This document shows positions 17,526 through 63,542 of a stretch of DNA of 64,000 nucleotides, in pieces. The position numbers and the translations under genes were made by a program. The DNA comes from Malacoraja senta (Eukaryota). The stretch lies in the NCBI GenBank assembly GCA_038087875.1, contig CM075977.1:84196001-84260000 (forward strand), read 5' to 3'. Within the stretch, counting starts at the first letter, position 1. Every line of letters starts with the position of its first letter. Below the pieces are notes generated by a model. That model was not told where the DNA came from, did not search any database, and saw only the letters and a program-made list of their open reading frames with translations.

Positions 17526-18689
17526 TCTAACAGCAGGAAAACTATCACTTAAATTGACCGTTTCATTATGGACTATTGTTGAAAATTGCACAATGGCCTG
17601 CAGCCTGGTAATATTGGGAGAGACCACAGACCTCGGTGTATTATGGGAGTACAGGTTTCCCTTCAATTAAATGAACAACTTAATTTCTTTTTTGCCAACC
17701 TCAACTGTAAGAGGCTAGAGTGAAATAAAACAGGAAGAAGCAGGGCCACACAGAAACACAAAAGTCAATAAGGCTTCCAAGGTTGTTAAATAAAACTCCC
17801 CATCATCATCCTGCAACGTAAGCACATGGAAATGCTGAACCAGAAAAGATTCAATCTTAAATATTTTTGCTTTAACTCTTTCGTGGCTGGGTTATTTTTC
17901 TGTGGAATGATCACAGTGGGCACGAGGCACCAGTTATGCTGTTGAAAGATTCCACTGAGTGTTTGCCGGACCATAGGGCCAGTTGGACAGCTAGCAACCA
18001 TGGAATTTTGGATTGAGATCAAGCAGTTAAGAAAAATAAAAATGCCTGTAAGTGGATACTTTAATGCAGTAGAAATTCAAACATTGTGTTTTACTGCAAG
18101 AGAAGATGTTTGGCTTGGGTAAGGCACATGGAATATATTTGAACAACAAAGGCCACACTTAGCAGGTTCATTTATCTGAACTGGCAGCCTNNNNNNNNNN
18201 NNNNNNNNNNNNNNNNNNNNNNNNNNNNNNNNNNNNNNNNNNNNNNNNNNNNNNNNNNNNNNNNNNNNNNNNNNNNNNNNNNNNNNNNNNNNNNNNNNNN
18301 NNNNNNNNNNNNNNNNNNNNNNNNNNNNNNNNNNNNNNNNNNNNNNNNNNNNNNNNNNNNNNNNNNNNNNNNNNNNNNNNNNNNNNNNNNCAACTTCTAT
18401 AACTGCCTTCCATATTTCAGGCCAATCTGTTGGACTGGGTGGTGCACAACACCTTGGATGTGCAGGCTGTGACTCTAATTATTCAAAGTCCTCAAAACAA
18501 GCAACATCAATGTTTTTATTTGTGTATTCATCTTGGCTACATGGATTTCTCAAAGCAGAAACCCATAAGCATTTGACAAACTGGAGTTGTGATTGGAAAA
18601 TATGTTTCTAAGTACAATACAATACGGTTTATTCGTCACATTGCACATAAAGTGCAAGTGAAATGAATTTGCCAGCAGCGGTACAAGTA

Positions 18690-20101
18690 ATCGATGCTCA
18701 AAGCTACTCTCTTACTGTGGTGTGTGCAAGGATGTGGTCATTATTTTGAAAAAACACTACCCTGCATCGCTGTGATTTTTGGCCATCTTACTCACAGTCC
18801 TCCTCCGCTGAGCCAGCCCCGAGGATTTATCCCATCGATGAAAAATAAAAGTTATGAGTGTTTTAAAAAACTTGAGATCAGCTGATTGGTCCTCTCGCAT
18901 GTCAATCACTGCAATGAAGGTAACGCCCCTTCTGGGGGGGGGGCAGGACTATAAAACCCCAGATGCCTGGACGTGAGTCTGTCACTCTGCAAGATCGCGA
19001 GGGAGAGGCCACGACTGTCATTCTAAGCTGTGAATTAACTGAACTGTGAGTCTGCAATGTACTTGCAATAAATAATTTGTTAGCCCTTAATGACAATGCC
19101 ATGAGTTGTTTGGCCTGCTGCCCTGTCTGTGCTTGAAAGTGCAATGTTTAATTGGAAATGAAATGAAATGAAATGACAATGCCATGAGTTGTTTGGCCTG
19201 CTGCCCTGCCTGTGCTTGAAATTGCAATGCTTTATTAGGTCCGACTGTGTTTGGAAGGAATAAATGCTTTATTAGGTCCGACTGTGTTTGGAAGGAATAA
19301 ATGCTTTATTAGATCCGACTGTGTTTGGAAGGCATAAATGCTTTGTTAGGTCCGAGTGTGTTTGGAAGGAATAAATGCTTTATTTGGTTCGACTGTGTTT
19401 GTAAGGAATAAATGCTTTATTAGGTCCGACAGTGTTCAGTCCAAAAGTCTCGCTTATTTCGTGACTTCCGCTTAGTGGACAGGTCACGCTGATTGCTTAA
19501 TTTCTGGTGAGTGCAGAGGTCACGCTGATTGCGGAAGTGCCGCTGACTGCGGAAGCCCTACAGTGGAAGGTCGTGCTNNNNNNNNNNNNNNNNNNNNNNN
19601 NNNNNNNNNNNNNNNNNNNNNNNNNNNNNNNNNNNNNNNNNNNNNNNNNNNNNNNNNNNNNNNNNNNNNNNNNNNNNNNNNNNNNNNNNNNNNNNNNNNN
19701 NNNNNNNNNNNNNNNNNNNNNNNNNNNNNNNNNNNNNNNNNNNNNNNNNNNNNNNNNNNNNNNNNNNNNNNNNNNNNNNNNNNNNNNNNNNNNNNNNNNN
19801 NNNNNNNNNNNNNNNNNNNNNNNNNNNNNNNNNNNNNNNNNNNNNNNNNNNNNNNNNNNNNNNNNNNNNNNNNNNNNNNNNNNNNNNNNNNNNNNNNNNN
19901 NNNNNNNNNNNNNNNNNNNNNNNNNNNNNNNNNNNNNNNNNNNNNNNNNNNNNNNNNNNNNNNNNNNNNNNNNNNNNNNNNNNTGTGTGGGAGGGTGGAG
20001 GGTGTGTTTTTATTGGAATTGGTGGAGAGGTGGAATAGTGAGTTGGGGGACCAGCCCCCCCCCATGTGAAGCTGGGACCCAACGGGTCCAACTTAGTCTA
20101 G
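18690..20101 (+). mobile_element. Non-autonomous Helitron (5' terminus lost, spans an assembly gap)
   Basis: 3' hairpin gggacccaacgggtcc (20074-20089) followed by CTAG at 20098-20101; 5' region similar to that of the Helitron at 32102-33498; continuity across gap 19578-19983 is inferred. Confidence 0.7.
19227..19436 (+). repeat. 37-bp minisatellite, about 5.7 copies
   Basis: Unit atgctttattaggtccgactgtgtttggaaggaataa starts at 19227, 19264, 19301, 19338, 19375 and 19412; no spacers. Confidence 0.95.
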
Positions 20102-25149: not shown

Positions 25150-25355
25150 TCTTCTTCTTATTATTATTATTATTATTATTTCGTGTCCATCAAATGTTGA
25201 CATTGCTGTCATTGTCCGTCCTGAAAAGGACGCAAGCTTCCGGCGACAATCAGTCGGAGTCATCACTTGTTGCAATAGATGATGGTGGTAGCAGAATTAG
25301 CTCGGGATACTTCCAGTTTCCAGCCCCGCGACGTGGACGCTTCTGCTATGGGGCC
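25150..25355 (-). mobile_element. Short non-LTR retroposon with 5' HDV-like ribozyme and (AAT)n(AAG)n tail
   Basis: TSD agtgatgggct at 25139-25149 and 25356-25366; microsatellite tail 25150-25181; CpG-rich structured body. Confidence 0.85.
25289..25355 (-). ncRNA. HDV-like self-cleaving ribozyme
   Basis: Minus strand parses as P1 GGCCCC / A / P2 TAGCAGAA / P3 GCG / L3 TCCACGT / P3' CGC / P1' GGGGCT / P1.1 GG / AAA / P4 CTGGA-AGTA-TCCCGAG / J4/2 CTAA / P2' TTCTGCTA. Confidence 0.85.
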
Positions 25356-25767
25356 AGTGATGGGCTCGTCAGGGAATTATTAGAAATGTGATTAGGTCCA
25401 AGTTGGCAGTGAGTGGTCCCAGATGCAAGAAGGTTGAGAAACCTTTACTCAAGAAGATGTTATCTTTGCACAGTCATCTATTTTTTTTTGCTATTAAAAA
25501 GAGGGATTAAGAGATGTAGAATAGATCAGCCATGATTGAATATCAGAGTAGACATGATGGGCCGAATGGCCTAGTTCTGCTCCTATTACTTATGAACATA
25601 ATACCAACATTGCATTTCTGGAGGTTTTTAGATGACCATTGTTGGACCTGAATATCTATAGGTTATTAGTCAAGAGATCTGGATTATTAGTCCAGTAATA
25701 TAACAACCACACTGCCATAAAATGGGAACTGAACTCCTTCCATGGTCCCAAGTCTATTTTGCCCTCT

Positions 25768-35670: not shown

Positions 35671-38600
35671 TCCCTCCTCTGCCTTCTCTACTCCAAGGTA
35701 AACAAATCTATCTTATCCAGTCTCACCTTATGAATGAAATGCTCCATCCCAAGCAAAATGCTAGTGAATCTCCACTGCACTCTCCACACTGTAATCACAC
35801 CCTTCCTATAGTTGTGAGCAGGACTGTACACAGTTTTCTTGCTATGACCAAAACAATGTTTTCTATGCTATACCATAACCTCCATGCTTTCATGTTGTGT
35901 GCCTCAGCTAATGATGGCTGATATCCCATATGCCTTCTAAACCACCTTATCTGCCTGTGCTGCCACCTTCAAGGCTCCCTGGCCTGTACATCAAGGTCCC
36001 CCAGTTCCTCAATACACCTTGGCGTTACAAATCATTGCGTATGTTCTGCCCTTGTTAATCATCCCAAATGCATCACTTCACAATTATCAGGAATACCTTC
36101 CACCTGCCTTTGCTTGATGCATTTTGCCAACTGATCAATATTTTCCTGTGGTCTATGAATATCTGCCTCATTATAAGCAATGTCCCCATTTTTTGTGCCA
36201 AGCTTACTAATCAAACCTCCTATTTCCCACAACCAGACTGTTTATGCAAACAGTAAAGCTTCCAGCATCTTGTGTTCAACTGAGAAAGCAGATGTGGTTA
36301 ATGCCTCGTCCAGCAGATAAGGCCCATGGCACTGCACTGAAGCAACAGATGCATTTTTTTGCTTTCAAGCCTCCAAGTAGGACTTGAATCCATAACTGTC
36401 TCAGAGTGACAGCGCCATTAACTGTCCCCACAGACAACATTTGCATTGTTGAAAAAATCCTAATACTCTAGTGAACCTTAAATTCTTAAAGTCATTCTCC
36501 AAAAAGGTCTTGAAATCTTCACTGTGCTGTAACTAACAAGCTGCTAAGCCATTAAACGCATTGATGCTATTGCAAATCTCTGAACTATATAGACTTGGGG
36601 ACATTGNNNNNNNNNNNNNNNNNNNNNNNNNNNNNNNNNNNNNNNNNNNNNNNNNNNNNNNNNNNNNNNNNNNNNNNNNNNNNNNNNNNNNNNNNNNNNN
36701 NNNNNNNNNNNNNNNNNNNNNNNNNNNNNNNNNNNNNNNNNNNNNNNNNNNNNNNNNNNNNNNNNNNNNNNNNNNNNNNNNNNNNNNNNNNNNNNNNNNN
36801 NNNNNNNNNNNNNNNNTATATTGGTTACAAATTCTGACATGCTGCTGCAAGTAAGAATTTCATTGTTCTATCTGGGACATATGGCAATAAAACAGTCTTG
36901 ACTCTTGACATCTGTTCTGAGGTAAAAACTTGCGTTCTCTTGACTGTGGTCTCACAATGGGGGAGGATTATGTGCTGCAGTGGGCATATCCACATTGGTA
37001 GACTTTTGAGAATATTGAATGGCAATCTTCTGTTGCACAGTATCGGTGCATTCAGGTGACAGATCTTTTATGGGAATATCTTCCTTGGGGATTTAATCAT
37101 TCTGAAGTAATGGAAATCACAGGCAGATGATGAGACTAAAAGGGCCAATGAGCTCATTGAGAGAGTGTGAGGTAAGAATTTGAGCTTTTTAATAGCCTGA
37201 AGGCGCTATCTTGGTTTTTAAATCAAATTGTGTGTGACCAAAACTATTCAATTATTATGTTGTTGCTGAGACCATATTTTTTTACCATTTAAAAAAAAAA
37301 TCCTGTTTATTTTATATTATTCTGTTTATTTTAGTTGAAGAAAAAGATGTAATTTCCAAATCACATCCATATGGTGAGCCTAACTTTAGGTGCAATTTTA
37401 ATTTCTGTCCGCAGTAGGCCCATTTTGTTTTAGCACTGTACTTTTAAAATGGATTGATTCACAGCAGTTTACATGCTAAAAATCAGTGTAGCTTGAGACC
37501 CACTGTTATATCTGACATAACTAATTCCAGGTCTGTTTTTCAGTTGCCTTAAAAACAAACTGAACAGAGAGGAGGAATCCCAAGGGTCCTGCCATTTGGT
37601 GGAAGCTTTCTGTTGATATTAAATAGGGGAAGCACATGGGTCGTCATCTGTTTTTACAAGTGGAAACTGGGCCTTCATGTGTTTGTACAAGTGAAAGGTG
37701 GTTTCAAATATCTAGCCTGTTGCTGGCTGGGAACAGCTATTCATTGTGGAGAAGTAAAAAGCAACCACAGTAATGTTGCTGAACTGAAGACATTTATGTC
37801 TTATTTGGGTTCTTGCTTGTACTATCAAATCCAAACCACTGATATCAAACATCCTTACAAATTATTACAGGCAATTGTTTCAGAAAGAAAATAAATATTT
37901 GGATTTCAATGTTAATTCTGCCTGTTCCACTACATTTTCAATCTAATGGAAAAGATTATCCTCCGAGGAAAACATGTAGGACAGTCTCTGTATGTTCAGA
38001 GCACACATTATTAAAACCCCATTCAGATTACATAGGATATAAAATGGATGGAAGGACAACTTTACATTGTGTCTGCTCTGTGCTGACAAAGGCTGTTGAG
38101 AAATTGGATCATATATTGTCAAGTTATAGACATGCAGCACAGAAACGGGGCCCTTCAGCCCAACTTCCCTATGCCGAGCAAGATGCCCTCTCTATACTAG
38201 TTAGTGTAGGAAGGAACTCCAGATGCTGGTTTAAACCGAAGATAGACACAAAATGCAGGAGTGTCTGAAGACACTCTGAAGACACTCTGAAGAGTCTTGA
38301 CGTGAAATGTCACCTATTCCTTCTCTCCAGAGATGCTGCCTTCCCTGCTGAGTTACTCTGTTTTTTTGTGTCTATCCTCTCTATACCAGTCCCATCTACC
38401 TGCAATTGGTCTATTCCCTCTAAACATTTTCTCTCCATATTCCTGTCTAAATGTCTTTTAAATATTGTTATAGTACCTTCCACAACTCCCTCCTCTGTCA
38501 GCTTGTTCCATATACAAACCACCACCCTCTGTGTGAATTGGCACAAAACAATATTACATTCATTAAATGGGAAGATTTGTATTATTCCATCTTTTTTTGT

Positions 38601-47943: not shown

Positions 47944-49449
47944 TTATAATTGCATCAGTGTGCTGGGACCAGGAAAGATCTTCGGAATTATGCACGCCCA
48001 GGATTTTAAGTTTTTTACCCTTTCCAACATCGTCCCGTTGATATAAACGGGATTGTGGGTCCCTATCCTACCCCATCCAAAGTTCACAATCAGTTCCTTG
48101 GTTTTGCTGATGTTGAGAGCCAGGTTATTGTGCTGGCACCATTTGGTCAATCGGTCGATCTCACTTCTATACTCTGACTCATCACCATTAGTGATTCGTC
48201 CCACAACAGTGGTGTCGTTGGTGAACTTGATGATGGAGTTTTTACTGTGTCCGGCTACACAGTCATGAGTATAGAGTGAGTACAGCAGGGGGCTGAGCAT
48301 GCAGACTTGAGGTGCTCCTGTGCTGATTGTTATCGAGGATGAAACGTTTCCACCAATACGGACAGACTGTGGTCTGTGGATGAGGAAGTTGAGGATCCCA
48401 TTGCAGAGCGATGTGCAGAGACCCAGATCTGAGAGTTTGGTAACCAGCTTGGAGGGGATGATGGTATTAAATGCCGAGCTGTAGTCTATGAACAACAGCC
48501 TGACATACGAGTTTTTGTTGTCCAAGTGGTCCAGAGCGGAGTGGAGAGCCAGTGAGATTGCATCCACCGTTGATCTGTTGTGGCGGTAAGTGAACTGCAG
48601 AGGGTCGAGGTTCTTGTCGAAGTAGGAATTGATATGCACCGTAATCAACCTCTCAAAGCACTTCATCACCACCGACGTTAATGCCACAGGTCGATAGTCA
48701 TTGAGGCACGTCACCTTGCTCTTCTTGGGCACCGGTATTATTGATGCCCTTTTAAAGCAGGTGGGAATATCAGACCTCAGAAGTGAGAAGTTGAAAATGT
48801 CTGTAAAATCTCCAGCCAGTTGGTCTGCACAGGTTTTGAGAACACGGCCGGGTATACCATCAGGTCCAGGTGCTTTCCGAGGGCTCATCCCCCTGAAGGA
48901 TCTTCTGACATCGGCCTCTGTGACTGTGACTGAAATACCATCATGGCGAATGGGGGCTCGGGAAGGCACATCAGTGTTCTCCCTATCAAAGCGTGCGTAA
49001 AACACATTGAGCTCGTCAGGGAGTGATGCTTCGCTGACATTTGAGCTGCCTCCTGATTTCGCCTTGTAGGAGGTGATGGCATTCAAGCCCCGCCAGAGTT
49101 GCCGAACATCCGTCTCATCCTCCAGCTTGGAGCAGAAGTCCCTTTTGGCCTTTTTGATGGCCTTACCATGGTTGTATCTGGACTTCTTGTAGACCACTGT
49201 ATCTCCAGACCTGAATGCCCGAGATCTGGTCTTTAGAAGAATGCGGACCACATGGTTCTGGTTAGGAAACACTCGGAAAGTTTCTGTTGGGACGCAGTCC
49301 TCCACACATGTCCTAATGAAGTCTGTAACGACTGTGGCGTATTCATGCAGATCCGTTGCTGAGTCCTTGAACATTATCCAGTCTACAGACTCCAAACAGT
49401 CCTGGAGTTGTTCCTCTGCCTCCCCCGACCAGCTTTGTGCAGTCCTCAC
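47944..49449 (-). pseudogene. Rex1/Babar reverse transcriptase domain (defective)
   Basis: KAPGPDGI, NDYRPVALTS, LFIDYSSAFNTI, TGAPQVC; catalytic FADD reads FTND; frameshift near 48000 and internal deletion near 47928. Confidence 0.93.
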
Positions 49450-50249
49450 CTCTGGGGTGCGCTCTTCAATTGCTGCCTGTAGACAGGGAGCAGCAGCACC
49501 GCAGTATGGTTGGATTTACTGAAGTGAGGGCGAGGGATAGAATGATAGGCGTCTTTGATGGTCATGTAGCAGTGGTCGAGGGTGTTTGATCCTCTGGTGT
49601 TGCAGGGGACATGTTGGTGGTTGTTAGGGAGCGATTTCTTCAGGTTGGCTTTGTTGAAATCCCCGGCAATGGTGGTAAATGCCTCGGGGTAAGCCGTCTG
49701 GTGCTTGTTGACCATGGCGTGCAGCTCCCCCAGTGCCAGATGTACATCAGCCTGGGGTGGGATGTAGACTGCGGTCAGGATGATGGAGGTGAATTCCCTT
49801 GGTTGGTAGAAGTGGCGGCACTTCACCGCCAGATGTTCGAGGTCTGGGGAGCAGGAGTTAGATAGAACTGCCACGTCTGAGCACCACGCAGAATTGACCA
49901 TGAGGCAGACACCCCCTCCTCTCCCTTTCCCAGATGCCAGTGTATGGTCCATGCAATGGATGGAGAAACCTTCAGGCTGGACTGCTGAGTCTGGGGAGCT
50001 GGGGGTGAGCCATGTCTCTGTGAAACAGAATACAGAGCATTCCCTCAGCTCACTTTGGTAAAGCAGCCTTGCCCTTAAGTCCTCCACCTTGTTTTCAAGG
50101 GACTGTACATTGGCCAGTAGGATGGTAGGGAGAGAGGGCCAAAGTCCCCTGCGCTTCAGTCTTACTTGTAGTCCTGCCCGACGACCACATTTCCGTACTC
50201 CATGAAGGCTTCCTCGCTGTTTACAGGTACAGTACTTGCGAGTCTCCAC
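49446..50249 (-). pseudogene. Rex1/Babar apurinic-like endonuclease domain
   Basis: LLANVQSL, FCFTETWL, GRGGGVC, AVYIPP, IAGDFN, NTLDHCY and SNH (for SDH); frameshift to the RT at about 49447. Confidence 0.92.
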
Positions 50250-60494: not shown

Positions 60495-61160
60495 TAGTTT
60501 ATTTTAGAGATACAGCACGGAAACAGGCCCTTTGGCCCACCGAGTCTGGGCCGACCAGCAATCCCCCCGCACATTAACACTATCCCACACACACTAGGGA
60601 CAATTTACATTCATACCAAGCCAATTTACCTACATACCAGTCTTTGGAGTGTGGGAGGAAACCGAAAATCTCAGAGTAAACCCACGCAGTCATGGGGAGA
60701 ACGTACAAACTCCATACAGACAGCACCCGTAGTCTGGATCGATCCCGGGTTTCCAGTGCTGCAAGCGCTGTAAGGCAACAACTCCACTGTGCCGCACTTG
60801 TTGTTAGTAAAAGAAAATAGTGAAAGGGACTTATCTCATTCTGAAGCTACAATAACTATTTAGTTTGGAGATACAGCATGGAACCGGCCCTTTCACCCAC
60901 CGATTCCATGGTGACCAATAATAAACACCCTTTAATGCCAATGCTATGCATTCCCATTTCTCATCCATTCCCTACACACTAGGGGCAATTTACAGGTACC
61001 AATTCACCTACAAACCCACCTGTCTTTGGGATGTGAAAGGAAACCAGAGTACCTGAAGGAAACTGGAGCACCTGGAGGGGACCCATGTAGTCACAGGAAG
61101 AAAATGGAAACTCCACACAGGCACCACCCAAGGTCAGGATCACTACCAGCTGTGCCACTG
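60495..61160 (-). mobile_element. Two tandem V-SINEs (about 60495-60797 and 60860-61160); a third on plus at about 61200-61475
   Basis: V-core gtgtgggaggaaaccg and CR1-like tails. Confidence 0.85.
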
Positions 61161-62109
61161 TTCTTACTCAGTTAAAATCAAATGTGCACCTCATGAATAG
61201 TGCTGCAGTAGGTAGAGCCATTGCCTCACAGCTCCAGGGATCTGGGTTCAATCCCAACCTCTGTTGCTTTCTGTGTGGAGCTTGCACGCTTTCCCAGTGA
61301 CCCTCTGTGCTTCAATTTCCTTCAAAGAAGTGTGGTCAGTGGCTATTGTAAATTTCTCCTAATGTAGGTGAGTGATGGGAGTGACTTGTTGGGCATGTGA
61401 GGAAGAACAAGTTACTGGGAGATGTGGGGGAATGCATATGATGGGTGACACAGAGAGCTGGCTTAGGCTTGGTCAAATGTCTCCGCCCGTATCATAAGGA
61501 AATGCGTGATCCCATTGTGTGACACATGACTGAAATTGGATCAATGAGTTTATCATTGCTATTATCAGACAAAACCATAAGACATAGGAGCAGAATTAGG
61601 TGATTCGCCCCATCAAGTCTAATCCACCACTCAATCATGGCTGATCTATTTTCCCCTCTCAACCCCATTTTTTTTTTTGCCTTATCCCTGTAATCTTTGA
61701 TGCCCTTACCAATCAAAAACCTATTAATCTTCACATTAAAAATACCCAACTCCCTGGCTTTACCTCTCCCTACCACTAAGCTTTTCTTGCCTTGTGCTCT
61801 TTTATTTTTGGCAATTTGTTCTTCCCCCAGATGTAATCATTATACTATTGGTGTACATTCCTCAAAGCCAAACTGTGCACTTCCTTAGCTACATTTCTCC
61901 ACCACCCTATTGTAGATGAGATATGCATGTGCCTTTAACATAGTGACCTCATACCTACTAACCACTCCCCATATCACAAGTATATCTACAACCTCCCCAC
62001 CCACAGATCGCTCTCTAGTTCCTGTGACAGACCACGTACAGCTAGTGCTATGTGTAATGCTCCAGTATGAATAAAGATAGTAAAGTAACGACGCCTCGTT
62101 ATGAAACCT

Positions 62110-63111
62110 TTACATGGTGTCAGAAGTGGGATGGAACGGAAGGGGCGGAGGAGGAGCAGAACGTTGCATGTCAGGACGGACGGGCAGAGCAACGCCCTGA
62201 CGCGAAACAGGCAGTGGGGGAGCAAAGGGATCCGCGGCAGGAGGACGCGGCTCGTTGACGAGCCGAAGGTGCTGGCGGGACCGTCGGTAAATGGCTCCAG
62301 CGTGGTCGACGAAATAGGACCTGGGCGACCCCGCAGAGCCGACGACAGTAGCGAGCTTGGAGTGACCGGGAACGGTCTGCATACGGACAACTTGACCGGG
62401 GAAGAGGCGCGGCAGCGGGTGGCAGGACCTGTCATGGGAACGCTTTTGGACGTCGTGCCTGAAGGCAATGCGTTTCTGAACCGCCGCAGGTGGGAGGATG
62501 GAGGGTATGAGGGAGCGCTGGGCCACAGGGAGCGGGAGTCTGGTAGCGCGAGACATGAGCCGCTGAGCAGGTGAACCCATGGCAGAGTCGCGGGAAATGT
62601 TCCGAAGGTTGAGGAGGGCCAGATGGAAGTTGGAGTTAATGCCACCACACTGTTCCAACAGGTGCTTAGCACTGCTTTGCGGGTACTCCGGGCTGCTGGT
62701 GAAATGGCGGAAGTTCCATCTGGAAGCGAACGCTTTAAACTCGGAGCTCGTGAACTGGCTGCCATTGTCCGACTGCAGGCTTGCCGGGGGGCCAAAAGTG
62801 GCAAAATGAGGGTACAACCTGTCGATGACGGCCGAAGAGGTCATGGAATGCAGCCGGTCGACCACAAACCAGCTGGAGTAGGAGTCAACGAGCACCAGGA
62901 AATGTTTGCCCCGCCACTCAAAAATGTCAGTGGCAAGCGCCATCCAGGGCAGTTCGGGCGCGGGCTGCTGTAGAAGCGGCTGACGCTGCTGATGGGGGGC
63001 GAGGCTGTTGCAGGTGGAACACGAGGAGACCCTCTCCCGGATGTATTTGGCCATGTCACCATTGTATTTGCCTGTCGTTTCGAAGAGGAAAGATGTAGAT
63101 GAGATATGCAT
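62110..63111 (-). pseudogene. Gypsy integrase fragment, antisense to the element, catalytically incomplete
   Basis: CSTC (HH of the Zn finger absent), PW...ATDIF, LVDSYS, SDNGSQFTS, SSPEYPQS|SAKHLL (NGxAER missing), C-terminal PRSY...YRRSRQHLR. Confidence 0.9.
62115..62132 (+). promoter_or_regulatory. Primer-binding site complementary to tRNA-Leu 3' end
   Basis: TGGTGTCAGAAGTGGGAT is the reverse complement of ATCCCACTTCTGACACCA, a vertebrate tRNA-Leu (CAA/CAG) 3' end. Confidence 0.9.
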
Positions 63112-63361
63112 GTGCCTTTAACATAGTGACCTCATACCTACTAACCACTCCCCATATCACAAGTATATCTACAACCTCCCCACCCACAGATCGCTCTCTA
63201 GTTCCTGTGACAGACCACGTACAGCTAGTGCTATGTGTAATGCTCCAGTATGAATAAAGATAGTAAAGTAACGACGCCTCGTTATGAAACCTTTACACCT
63301 ATCTCATTACTCCTTTACGATATTGCCTGAGGTTATCTCCCTGTGGCCGCATAGGTTTCCT

Positions 63362-63456
63362 CTGGGTGCTCCGGTTTCCTCTGGATGCTCCGGTTTCTTC
63401 TAGGTGCTACGGTTTCCACTGGGTGCTCCGGTTTCCACTGGGTGCTCTGGTTTCCT
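63362..63456 (+). repeat. 19-bp x5 tandem expansion of the V-SINE core
   Basis: Unit ctgggtgctccggtttcc(t/a) inside a V-SINE remnant (about 63335-63480). Confidence 0.9.
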
Positions 63457-63542
63457 CCGACACCCCAAAGACGTGCAAAACCTGAGGAGAATTTCAGGAA
63501 AATGACCCAAAATGTGGTAATTGCGGTAACATTTGGCAATAT

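What the first reader, a model, noticed from the sequence alone, without database searches (positions are those of the whole stretch)
61906..63302. Young mini-LTR element carrying only an inverted (antisense) integrase
Seen: identical LTRs and an intact TSD indicate recent insertion. PBS, PPT and AATAAA all define plus orientation, yet nearly all of the 979-bp interior (about 62140-63057) is integrase coding sequence on the minus strand; gag, protease and RT are absent. Known: Gypsy pol is normally sense to the PBS, and TRIM-like elements move in trans. Inference: its LTR transcript is both a packageable genome and about 900 nt of antisense RNA to the autonomous helper, so it could act as a mobile silencer (dsRNA/piRNA source) or a defective-interfering element.
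Basis: partly seen in the sequence, partly recalled or inferred. Interest (0 to 1): 0.75.

Follow-up and report, generated by a model that had tools for sequence, protein, structure and literature searches.

The report
Mini LTR element with backwards integrase
A 1.4-kb retrotransposon remnant in a skate-like genome has correctly oriented ends and priming sites but carries only a dead integrase fragment facing backwards; it is most likely a recent copying accident, and no evidence shows a new kind of silencer.

Summary
Two identical 204-bp LTRs (61911-62114, 63094-63297; TG..CA ends) sit inside a 5-bp duplication (CCTAT). An 18/18 match to the complement of the tRNA-Leu(CAA) 3' end abuts the 5' LTR. 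A 12-nt polypurine tract abuts the 3' LTR. These fix the element on the + strand.

The interior is a 919-nt integrase fragment on the minus strand (62148-63066), with at most 15 unassigned bases on each side. It has no stop or frameshift, but it lacks the His pair of the zinc finger, the C-terminal tail and, through an in-frame 9-residue gap, the catalytic glutamate. There is no gag, protease or RT.

Undepleted CpG and identical LTRs indicate recent origin. My best reading is a non-autonomous Ty3/Gypsy derivative made by a strand-transfer error in reverse transcription and integrated by a helper's integrase.

The "mobile silencer" idea is therefore untested. Earlier unchecked notes of this scan report other aberrant Gypsy insertions elsewhere in this genome, including a pol fragment fused to tRNA-Leu in the wrong orientation.

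The parts
61906..61910 (.). Left copy of the 5-bp target-site duplication, CCTAT
   Evidence: Read directly; identical to 63298-63302
61911..62114 (+). 5' LTR, 204 bp, TG...CA. It has a TATA-like TATATC at 61982-61987 (inferred) and AATAAA at 62070-62075
   Evidence: 100% identical to the 3' LTR; motifs read
62115..62132 (+). Primer-binding site, 18 nt, complementary to the 3' end of tRNA-Leu(CAA) including CCA
   Evidence: 18/18 match to the tRNA-Leu(CAA) probe printed in PMC7997516. It starts at the first base after the LTR
62133..62147 (.). 15 unassigned bases, either the end of the inverted proline-rich integrase tail or a leader remnant
   Evidence: Lies between the PBS and the last tblastn-aligned integrase codon
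62148..63066 (-). Integrase-derived fragment. It runs from the CxxC half of the zinc finger through the DD(E) core to the proline-rich tail, is open in frame and is catalytically incomplete
   Evidence: Pfam rve E 8e-14; BLASTP/tblastn to P0001, P0030 and P0005; alignment A1
62673..62674 (-). Site of the in-frame 9-residue gap, where relatives have NGLAERAVR including the DD35E glutamate
   Evidence: Gap in the BLASTP alignment to P0001. The nearly invariant N, G and E columns of A1 are absent in the window protein
62110..63111 (-). 333-aa open reading frame. Its ATG lies in the reverse complement of the 3' LTR, it runs through the PPT, integrase fragment and PBS, and its stop lies in the 5' LTR
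   Evidence: There are 0 stops in this frame; shuffles of the interior give an open frame in 0.025% of trials
63067..63081 (.). 15 unassigned bases between the integrase fragment and the PPT, probably native pre-PPT sequence
   Evidence: No homology beyond 63066
63082..63093 (+). Polypurine tract GAAGAGGAAAGA abutting the 3' LTR
   Evidence: Read directly
63094..63297 (+). 3' LTR, 204 bp, identical to the 5' LTR; AATAAA at 63253-63258
63298..63302 (.). Right copy of the target-site duplication, CCTAT
   Evidence: Read directly

Best explanation
This is a real, recently integrated, non-autonomous derivative of a tRNA-Leu-primed Ty3/Gypsy-type retrotransposon of a skate-like genome. It keeps only the cis parts needed for reverse transcription and integration: two LTRs, an 18-nt PBS and a 12-nt PPT. 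Between them it carries about 0.92 kb of the family's (or a sister family's) integrase gene in reverse orientation. Most likely origin (inferred): a strand-transfer error during reverse transcription. In the simplest version, plus-strand strong-stop DNA, which ends exactly at the 18th PBS base, was extended on sense RNA in the integrase tail instead of on the minus-strand PBS copy. It thereby synthesised antisense integrase. Its 3' end then paired with a minus strand that had stopped just past the PPT, and both ends were filled in to give a linear DNA with two complete LTRs. An equivalent version is a double template switch of the minus strand onto an antisense template. A helper's integrase then pasted this cDNA into the chromosome, producing the 5-bp TSD. 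The integrase fragment cannot be catalytically active. The open frame is what a very recent copy of an active gene would show and is not evidence of selection. On present evidence the element is a by-product, either one-off or low-copy, and not a demonstrated regulatory device.
For: Shown: identical direct LTRs, TG..CA ends and a 5-bp TSD. PBS matches the tRNA-Leu(CAA) complement 18/18, flush with the LTR. PPT is flush with the 3' LTR. The integrase fragment lies on the opposite strand at 62148-63066, with at most 15 nt to spare on each side. It lacks the HH half of the zinc finger, the catalytic E and about 100 aa of C-terminal tail that relatives carry. No other pol homology exists in the element or the window. 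Interior CpG o/e is 0.88 against 0.38 for the window. Zero LTR differences give an upper age of about 4-15 My depending on rate. The left junction at or within 15 nt of the 18th PBS base is where plus-strand strong-stop DNA ends (established retroviral reverse-transcription scheme; my knowledge). Leads only, unchecked: the same genome has notes of fold-back Gypsy insertions with clean TSDs (s1-195530, s1-175031, s1-170640) and of a Gypsy pol fragment fused to 32 nt of tRNA-Leu 'in the wrong orientation' (s1-187713).
Against: The mechanism is inferred from anatomy alone. The parent sequence is unknown, so microhomology at the two junctions cannot be examined. Both junctions lie tightly against the PBS and PPT. 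That would also result from selection for a minimal transposing element, or from insertion of a fragment into a pre-existing TRIM. Copy number is unknown, so a propagating family is not excluded. It is not shown that the LTRs and the integrase fragment come from the same family (LTR GC 43%, interior 60%). The best protein relative is only 70% identical, so no candidate helper has been identified.
Confidence: 0.55

Rival explanations
1. It is one member of a propagating non-autonomous family. The inverted form is repeatedly transcribed from its LTR, packaged and mobilised in trans. Its genomic RNA, being antisense to helper integrase mRNA, may feed dsRNA/piRNA silencing or act as a defective-interfering genome.
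For: All cis requirements are intact and minimal: LTRs, PBS, PPT and an AATAAA in sense. The interior is stripped to within 15 nt of the PBS and PPT, as expected for a streamlined parasite. Identical LTRs and a TSD show at least one integration. The antisense relation to integrase is a direct consequence of the anatomy.
Against: There is no second copy in the 64-kb window. The earlier-findings index returned no look-alike for the LTR, though the operators warn that this blank means little. No protein above 70% identity exists among 5.8 billion clusters, and the exact ORF is absent from the collection. So neither sibling copies nor a close helper are visible. There are no RNA or small-RNA data. 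One integration is equally explained by a dead-on-arrival cDNA.
Confidence: 0.27
2. A pre-existing TRIM-like shell (LTR-PBS-about 30 nt-PPT-LTR) captured a foreign integrase fragment in random orientation. The fragment possibly came from a different Gypsy family. Capture occurred by template switching to a co-packaged RNA or as filler DNA.
For: Only 15+15 unassigned bases remain besides the PBS and PPT, which resembles a minimal TRIM interior. GC differs sharply between the LTRs (43%) and the insert (60%). Transduction-like capture of extra sequences in one or a few copies, in either orientation, is described for LTR elements (PMC11963269).
Against: No such shell has been observed, and the window holds no other LTR copy. 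The left junction may be flush with the PBS, because proline-rich tail homology plausibly runs to 62134 (my reading). That would leave no TRIM interior on that side.
Confidence: 0.1
3. The minus-strand 333-aa ORF is expressed from antisense promoter activity in or beyond the 3' LTR. It would yield a truncated, catalytically dead integrase that interferes with the helper, as a dominant-negative restriction factor.
For: The frame is open through the whole interior, with an ATG 18 nt inside the 3' LTR. The gap that removes the catalytic E is in frame. Antisense proteins are known in retroviruses and some LTR elements (PMC11963269).
Against: An open frame is expected for a very young copy. The extra 15-19 and about 12 non-integrase codons at the ends had roughly a one-in-three chance of being stop-free (my rough estimate from the roughly 5% share of stop codons, not computed). 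An in-frame gap has a one-in-three chance. There is no expression or conservation evidence. Loss of half the zinc finger and the tail argues for an arbitrary fragment.
Confidence: 0.04
4. The structure arose after integration or in the computer. Either a normal element suffered a DNA-level inversion plus deletions, or the assembly is wrong.
For: Inversions in nested TEs are noted elsewhere in this genome (s1-140632; unchecked).
Against: This would need two or more breakpoints to fall by chance within about 15 nt of the PBS and PPT while the LTRs stayed identical. Direct identical LTRs cannot by themselves cause an assembler to invert the interior. The 1.4-kb element is shorter than a typical long read.
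Confidence: 0.04

Closest known systems
TRIM / SMART / LARD non-autonomous LTR retrotransposons
   Same: Two LTRs, with a PBS and a PPT at the ends of the interior. It has no working mobilisation proteins, presumably depends on a helper in trans, and has a 5-bp TSD (definition in PMC10886601).
   Different: At 1387 bp it exceeds the usual TRIM limit of under 1000 bp and is far below LARD size. Its interior is neither non-coding nor a sense-strand deletion remnant; it is a pol fragment in reverse orientation. Family status (many copies) is not shown.
Transduction-like capture and extra ORFs (aORFs) in LTR retrotransposons and retroviruses, including antisense genes such as HTLV-1 HBZ
   Same: Extra sequence lies between the LTRs on the antisense strand and carries an open frame. 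[quoted passage not shown]
   Different: Here the antisense sequence is the element family's own kind of integrase, not a host or accessory gene. It replaces gag-pol rather than accompanying it.
Aberrant reverse-transcription products integrated into chromosomes (fold-back or snap-back cDNAs; strong-stop mis-transfer)
   Same: Clean TSD and intact LTR termini around an internally rearranged cDNA. Unchecked notes report fold-back Gypsy insertions in this same genome (s1-195530, s1-175031, s1-170640).
   Different: Those have inverted LTRs or one LTR. This one keeps both LTRs direct and inverts only the interior, which needs a different pair of strand switches.
Antisense-based copy-number control and defective-interfering genomes (Ty1 antisense RNAs and truncated Gag; antisense TE fragments in piRNA clusters)
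   Same: An LTR-driven transcript here would be antisense to a helper gene. This is the raw material of such control (my knowledge; not tested).
   Different: In the known cases the antisense RNA comes from internal or host promoters or from fixed clusters, not from a mobile mini-element. No RNA evidence exists here.

Membership tests
LTR retrotransposon (structural definition) | Direct long terminal repeats with TG...CA ends | tested here: met
   204/204 identical, TGTAG...TTACA
LTR retrotransposon (structural definition) | Short target-site duplication flanking the LTR pair | tested here: met
   CCTAT on both sides
LTR retrotransposon (structural definition) | tRNA-complementary PBS after the 5' LTR and a PPT before the 3' LTR, on the same strand | tested here: met
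   18/18 to the tRNA-Leu(CAA) complement; 12-nt purine run flush with the 3' LTR. The opposite strand has neither
Ty3/Gypsy (Metaviridae) lineage | pol order RT-RNase H-IN and Gypsy-type integrase | tested here: inconclusive
   The element has no RT. Its integrase relatives carry RT_RNaseH plus H2C2 plus rve domains (P0008, P0015, P0044) and names such as 'Gypsy retrotransposon integrase-like protein 1' and 'K02A2.6-like'. No phylogeny was made
TRIM | Total length below about 1000 bp | tested here: not met
   1387 bp without the TSD; limit as given in PMC10886601
TRIM | No functional mobilisation proteins; interior bounded by PBS and PPT | tested here: met
   Only a truncated, E-less integrase on the wrong strand
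TRIM | Dispersed multi-copy family mobilised in trans | not testable with these tools
   One copy in the window.
Catalytically competent retroviral-type integrase | HHCC zinc finger and complete D,D,35E triad | tested here: not met
   The fragment starts after the two His residues. D63 and D115 are present, but the NG..E columns are absent through a 9-aa gap
Antisense silencer / piRNA or dsRNA source | Sense-strand LTR transcript and derived small RNAs complementary to an active helper | not testable with these tools

The most novel reading that the evidence does not exclude
The inverted-integrase mini-element is a transposing family whose packaged genome is itself a 0.9-kb antisense RNA to its helper's integrase. 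Each new insertion would then add a helper-directed dsRNA/piRNA source: a self-spreading, helper-dependent silencer that throttles the very element mobilising it.
Probability: 0.06. Interest if true: 0.8.

Novelty: new variant of a known kind. Interest (0 to 1): 0.35.

Why it matters
If this is a one-off, it is a clean natural record of a rare reverse-transcription error: direct LTRs are kept and only the interior is flipped. Together with the other aberrant Gypsy insertions noted in this genome, it suggests an unusually error-prone or very active tRNA-Leu-primed Gypsy lineage in skates. If it is a family, it would be an unusual case of a non-autonomous LTR element whose own genome is antisense to its helper. 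That bears on how parasites of parasites and small-RNA defences arise. Nothing here yet supports the second reading.

Tried and rejected
- Minus-strand orientation of the whole element: rejected. After the reverse-complemented LTR there is no TGG-type PBS, and the far end is pyrimidine-rich, so there is no PPT.
- A larger minus-strand Gypsy element continuing into the flanks: rejected. tblastn of all 68 fetched relatives finds nothing outside 61900-63310.
- A paralogous empty site in the window to confirm the insertion boundaries: none spans the junction. Only the upstream flank is a dispersed repeat.
An exact LTR-end plus PBS pattern in metagenome contigs gave 0 hits. The findings index by sequence was blank. 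The exact ORF is not in the protein collection.
- P0030 (L. erinacea) as a near parent: rejected. It is 58-65% identical by tblastn over frameshifted pieces. By eye it is about 80% identical in its in-frame stretches.
- tRNA genes in the window to check the PBS directly: none found. A published tRNA-Leu(CAA) probe was used instead.
- Literature precedent for an inverted pol or integrase interior in a non-autonomous LTR element: none found in the (absence from this library only).
- The costly all-against-all protein search, structure prediction and complex prediction were not used, because no claim here rests on them.

Full report
**Observation**

- The repeat finder and blastn give two 204-nt direct repeats at 61911-62114 and 63094-63297. 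They are 100% identical (E 9e-105) and are the only copies in the 64-kb window.
- The repeats begin with TG and end with CA, and are flanked by CCTAT at 61906-61910 and 63298-63302.
- Directly after the 5' LTR comes TGGTGTCAGAAGTGGGAT (62115-62132). A full-text search found this string at the start of an oligonucleotide designed against mouse tRNA-Leu(CAA), 5'-TGGTGTCAGAAGTGGGATTCGAACCC... (PMC7997516). The site is therefore an 18/18 complement of the tRNA's 3' end including CCA, the length expected for a primer-binding site. The chance of this at a fixed position is about 1e-11.
- Directly before the 3' LTR lies GAAGAGGAAAGA (63082-63093), a polypurine tract.
- Each LTR has AATAAA about 40 nt before its end on the + strand. 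The reverse strand has no AATAAA, no TGG-type PBS and no purine tract in the right places.

The + orientation of the cis signals is therefore robust.

**Interior**

The 979-nt interior (62115-63093) has 60% G+C, against 43% for the LTRs and the window.
- On the minus strand it is a single open frame. The ORF runs from 63111 to 62110 (333 aa), with its ATG 18 nt inside the reverse complement of the 3' LTR and its stop inside the 5' LTR. Shuffled interiors are open in a given frame in 0.025% of trials.
- Pfam finds the integrase core domain rve at residues 62-144, E 8e-14.
- The word-based protein search returns 54 relatives. The best is a Leucoraja erinacea protein at 70% identity over 281 residues, E 1e-137. 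Others are named 'Gypsy retrotransposon integrase-like protein 1' or 'K02A2.6-like', and several carry RT/RNase H domains upstream of the integrase.
- tblastn places integrase-derived DNA at 62148-63066. Besides the 18-nt PBS and 12-nt PPT, this leaves only 15 unassigned bases on each side.
- No gag, protease or RT similarity exists in the element, and no Gypsy pol similarity exists anywhere else in the window.

**State of the integrase**

Alignment with ten relatives (A1) and with P0001 shows three defects.
- The fragment begins after the two histidines of the HHCC zinc finger, so only CxxC is kept.
- An in-frame gap of nine residues sits where relatives read NGLAERAVR. This removes the glutamate of the D,D,35E triad. 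The two aspartates are present.
- The fragment stops in the proline-rich tail, about 100 residues short of the conserved ...RTRSGR..P..RY end seen in P0005, P0029, P0034 and P0040.

It cannot be an active integrase. It has no frameshift or stop, which is what a very recent copy of a working gene would look like. The stop-free non-integrase codons at its ends and the in-frame gap are each events of roughly one-in-three probability. The first of these figures is my rough estimate, not computed. The open frame alone is therefore not evidence of selection.

**Age**

Zero differences between the LTRs give a 95% upper bound of about 4-15 My, depending on the substitution rate assumed. CpG observed/expected is 0.88 in the interior, against 0.24 in the 2 kb upstream and 0.38 in the window. 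The insert has therefore not undergone the methylation-driven CpG decay of its surroundings. 'Young' is justified in that sense.

**What it is**

It is a non-autonomous LTR element, most likely of Ty3/Gypsy ancestry, integrated by an integrase supplied in trans. Intact TG/CA ends and a 5-bp TSD support this.
- It works like a TRIM or other small non-autonomous LTR element, but at 1387 bp it fails the usual TRIM size criterion (PMC10886601).
- Whether it belongs to a multi-copy family is unknown.
- Its peculiarity is the orientation of its only coding-derived content.

**How it probably arose (inferred)**

Both junctions lie within 15 nt of the two priming sites. The left one may be flush with PBS base 18, since the proline-rich tail of relatives plausibly aligns up to 62134 (my reading). 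Plus-strand strong-stop DNA ends exactly at PBS base 18 (established retroviral scheme; my knowledge). The proposed sequence of events is:
1. The strong-stop 3' end was extended on sense RNA in the integrase tail instead of on the minus-strand PBS copy.
2. It therefore synthesised antisense integrase.
3. Its new 3' end paired with a minus strand that had stopped shortly past the PPT.
4. Fill-in of both ends gave LTR-PBS-(inverted IN)-PPT-LTR, an integration-competent linear DNA.

A double switch of the minus strand onto an antisense template gives the same product. Such a cDNA integrated once would show identical LTRs and a TSD without ever having transposed as such.

Unchecked notes of this scan report other aberrant Gypsy insertions with clean TSDs in this same genome:
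- fold-back forms (s1-195530, s1-175031, s1-170640);
- a Gypsy pol fragment fused to 32 nt of tRNA-Leu 'in the wrong orientation' (s1-187713);
- a 213-bp capture with an inverted tRNA-Leu PBS (s1-140824);
- a young gag-less Gypsy element (s1-206972).

I could not read those loci. They are leads that make an error-prone, active tRNA-Leu-primed lineage plausible.

**Rivals**
It is distinguished only by copy number and RNA data.
- A TRIM shell that captured a foreign integrase fragment would explain the G+C contrast and the tiny native interior.
- An expressed dominant-negative integrase is permitted by the open frame but unsupported.
- Post-insertion rearrangement or mis-assembly would need improbable breakpoints.

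**What could not be done**
No statement about long-read support, copy depth or transcription is possible.
- A metagenome scan for the LTR-end plus PBS string was blank.
- No protein above 70% identity and no exact copy of the ORF exist in the protein collection. This says only that this family is not represented there.
- Literature searches found no precedent for an inverted pol interior in a non-autonomous LTR element. They did document antisense extra ORFs and few-copy transduction-like captures in LTR elements (PMC11963269).

**Verdict**

I class it as a new variant of a known kind, a small non-autonomous LTR element with an inverted integrase remnant. It is most likely a product of a reverse-transcription strand-transfer error. 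Interest is moderate (0.35). It would rise sharply if sibling copies with the same breakpoints and LTR-driven antisense RNA were found.

Noticed in passing
window 25290-25366 (-): Rfam match to the CPEB3 (HDV-like) ribozyme family, 36.9 bits against a gathering score of 35, full model length. It lies inside the stretch that a first-stage note (s1-206902) calls a ribozyme-headed short retroposon.
   Followed up: partly
window 47944-50249 (-): Two adjacent long ORFs of a LINE-type retrotransposon. One has an RVT_1 reverse transcriptase domain (E 7e-23). The other has a weak, sub-threshold endonuclease/exonuclease/phosphatase domain match (E 9e-4).
   Followed up: partly
window 63335-63476: A tandem array of about six to seven 19-nt units (GGTTTCCTCTGGGTGCTCC-like) lies 33 nt downstream of the element. 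A partially complementary 62-nt stretch lies at 61022-61083.
   Followed up: no
window 61572-61766: The sequence just upstream of the insertion is a dispersed repeat. It has 72-85% identical copies at about 1.6, 4.4, 5.1, 23.3, 25.5 and 53.2 kb of the window. The mini-element therefore landed in or beside older repeats.
   Followed up: no
P0001 and P0040 (relatives from other genomes): Several related proteins look like internally deleted pol or gag-pol fusions. In P0040, RT runs straight into the integrase C-terminal part. P0001 has a gag-like N-terminus joined to integrase. Deleted derivatives seem common in this lineage.
   Followed up: no
window 18191-18390, 19578-19983, 36607-36816: Three runs of N.
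   Followed up: no
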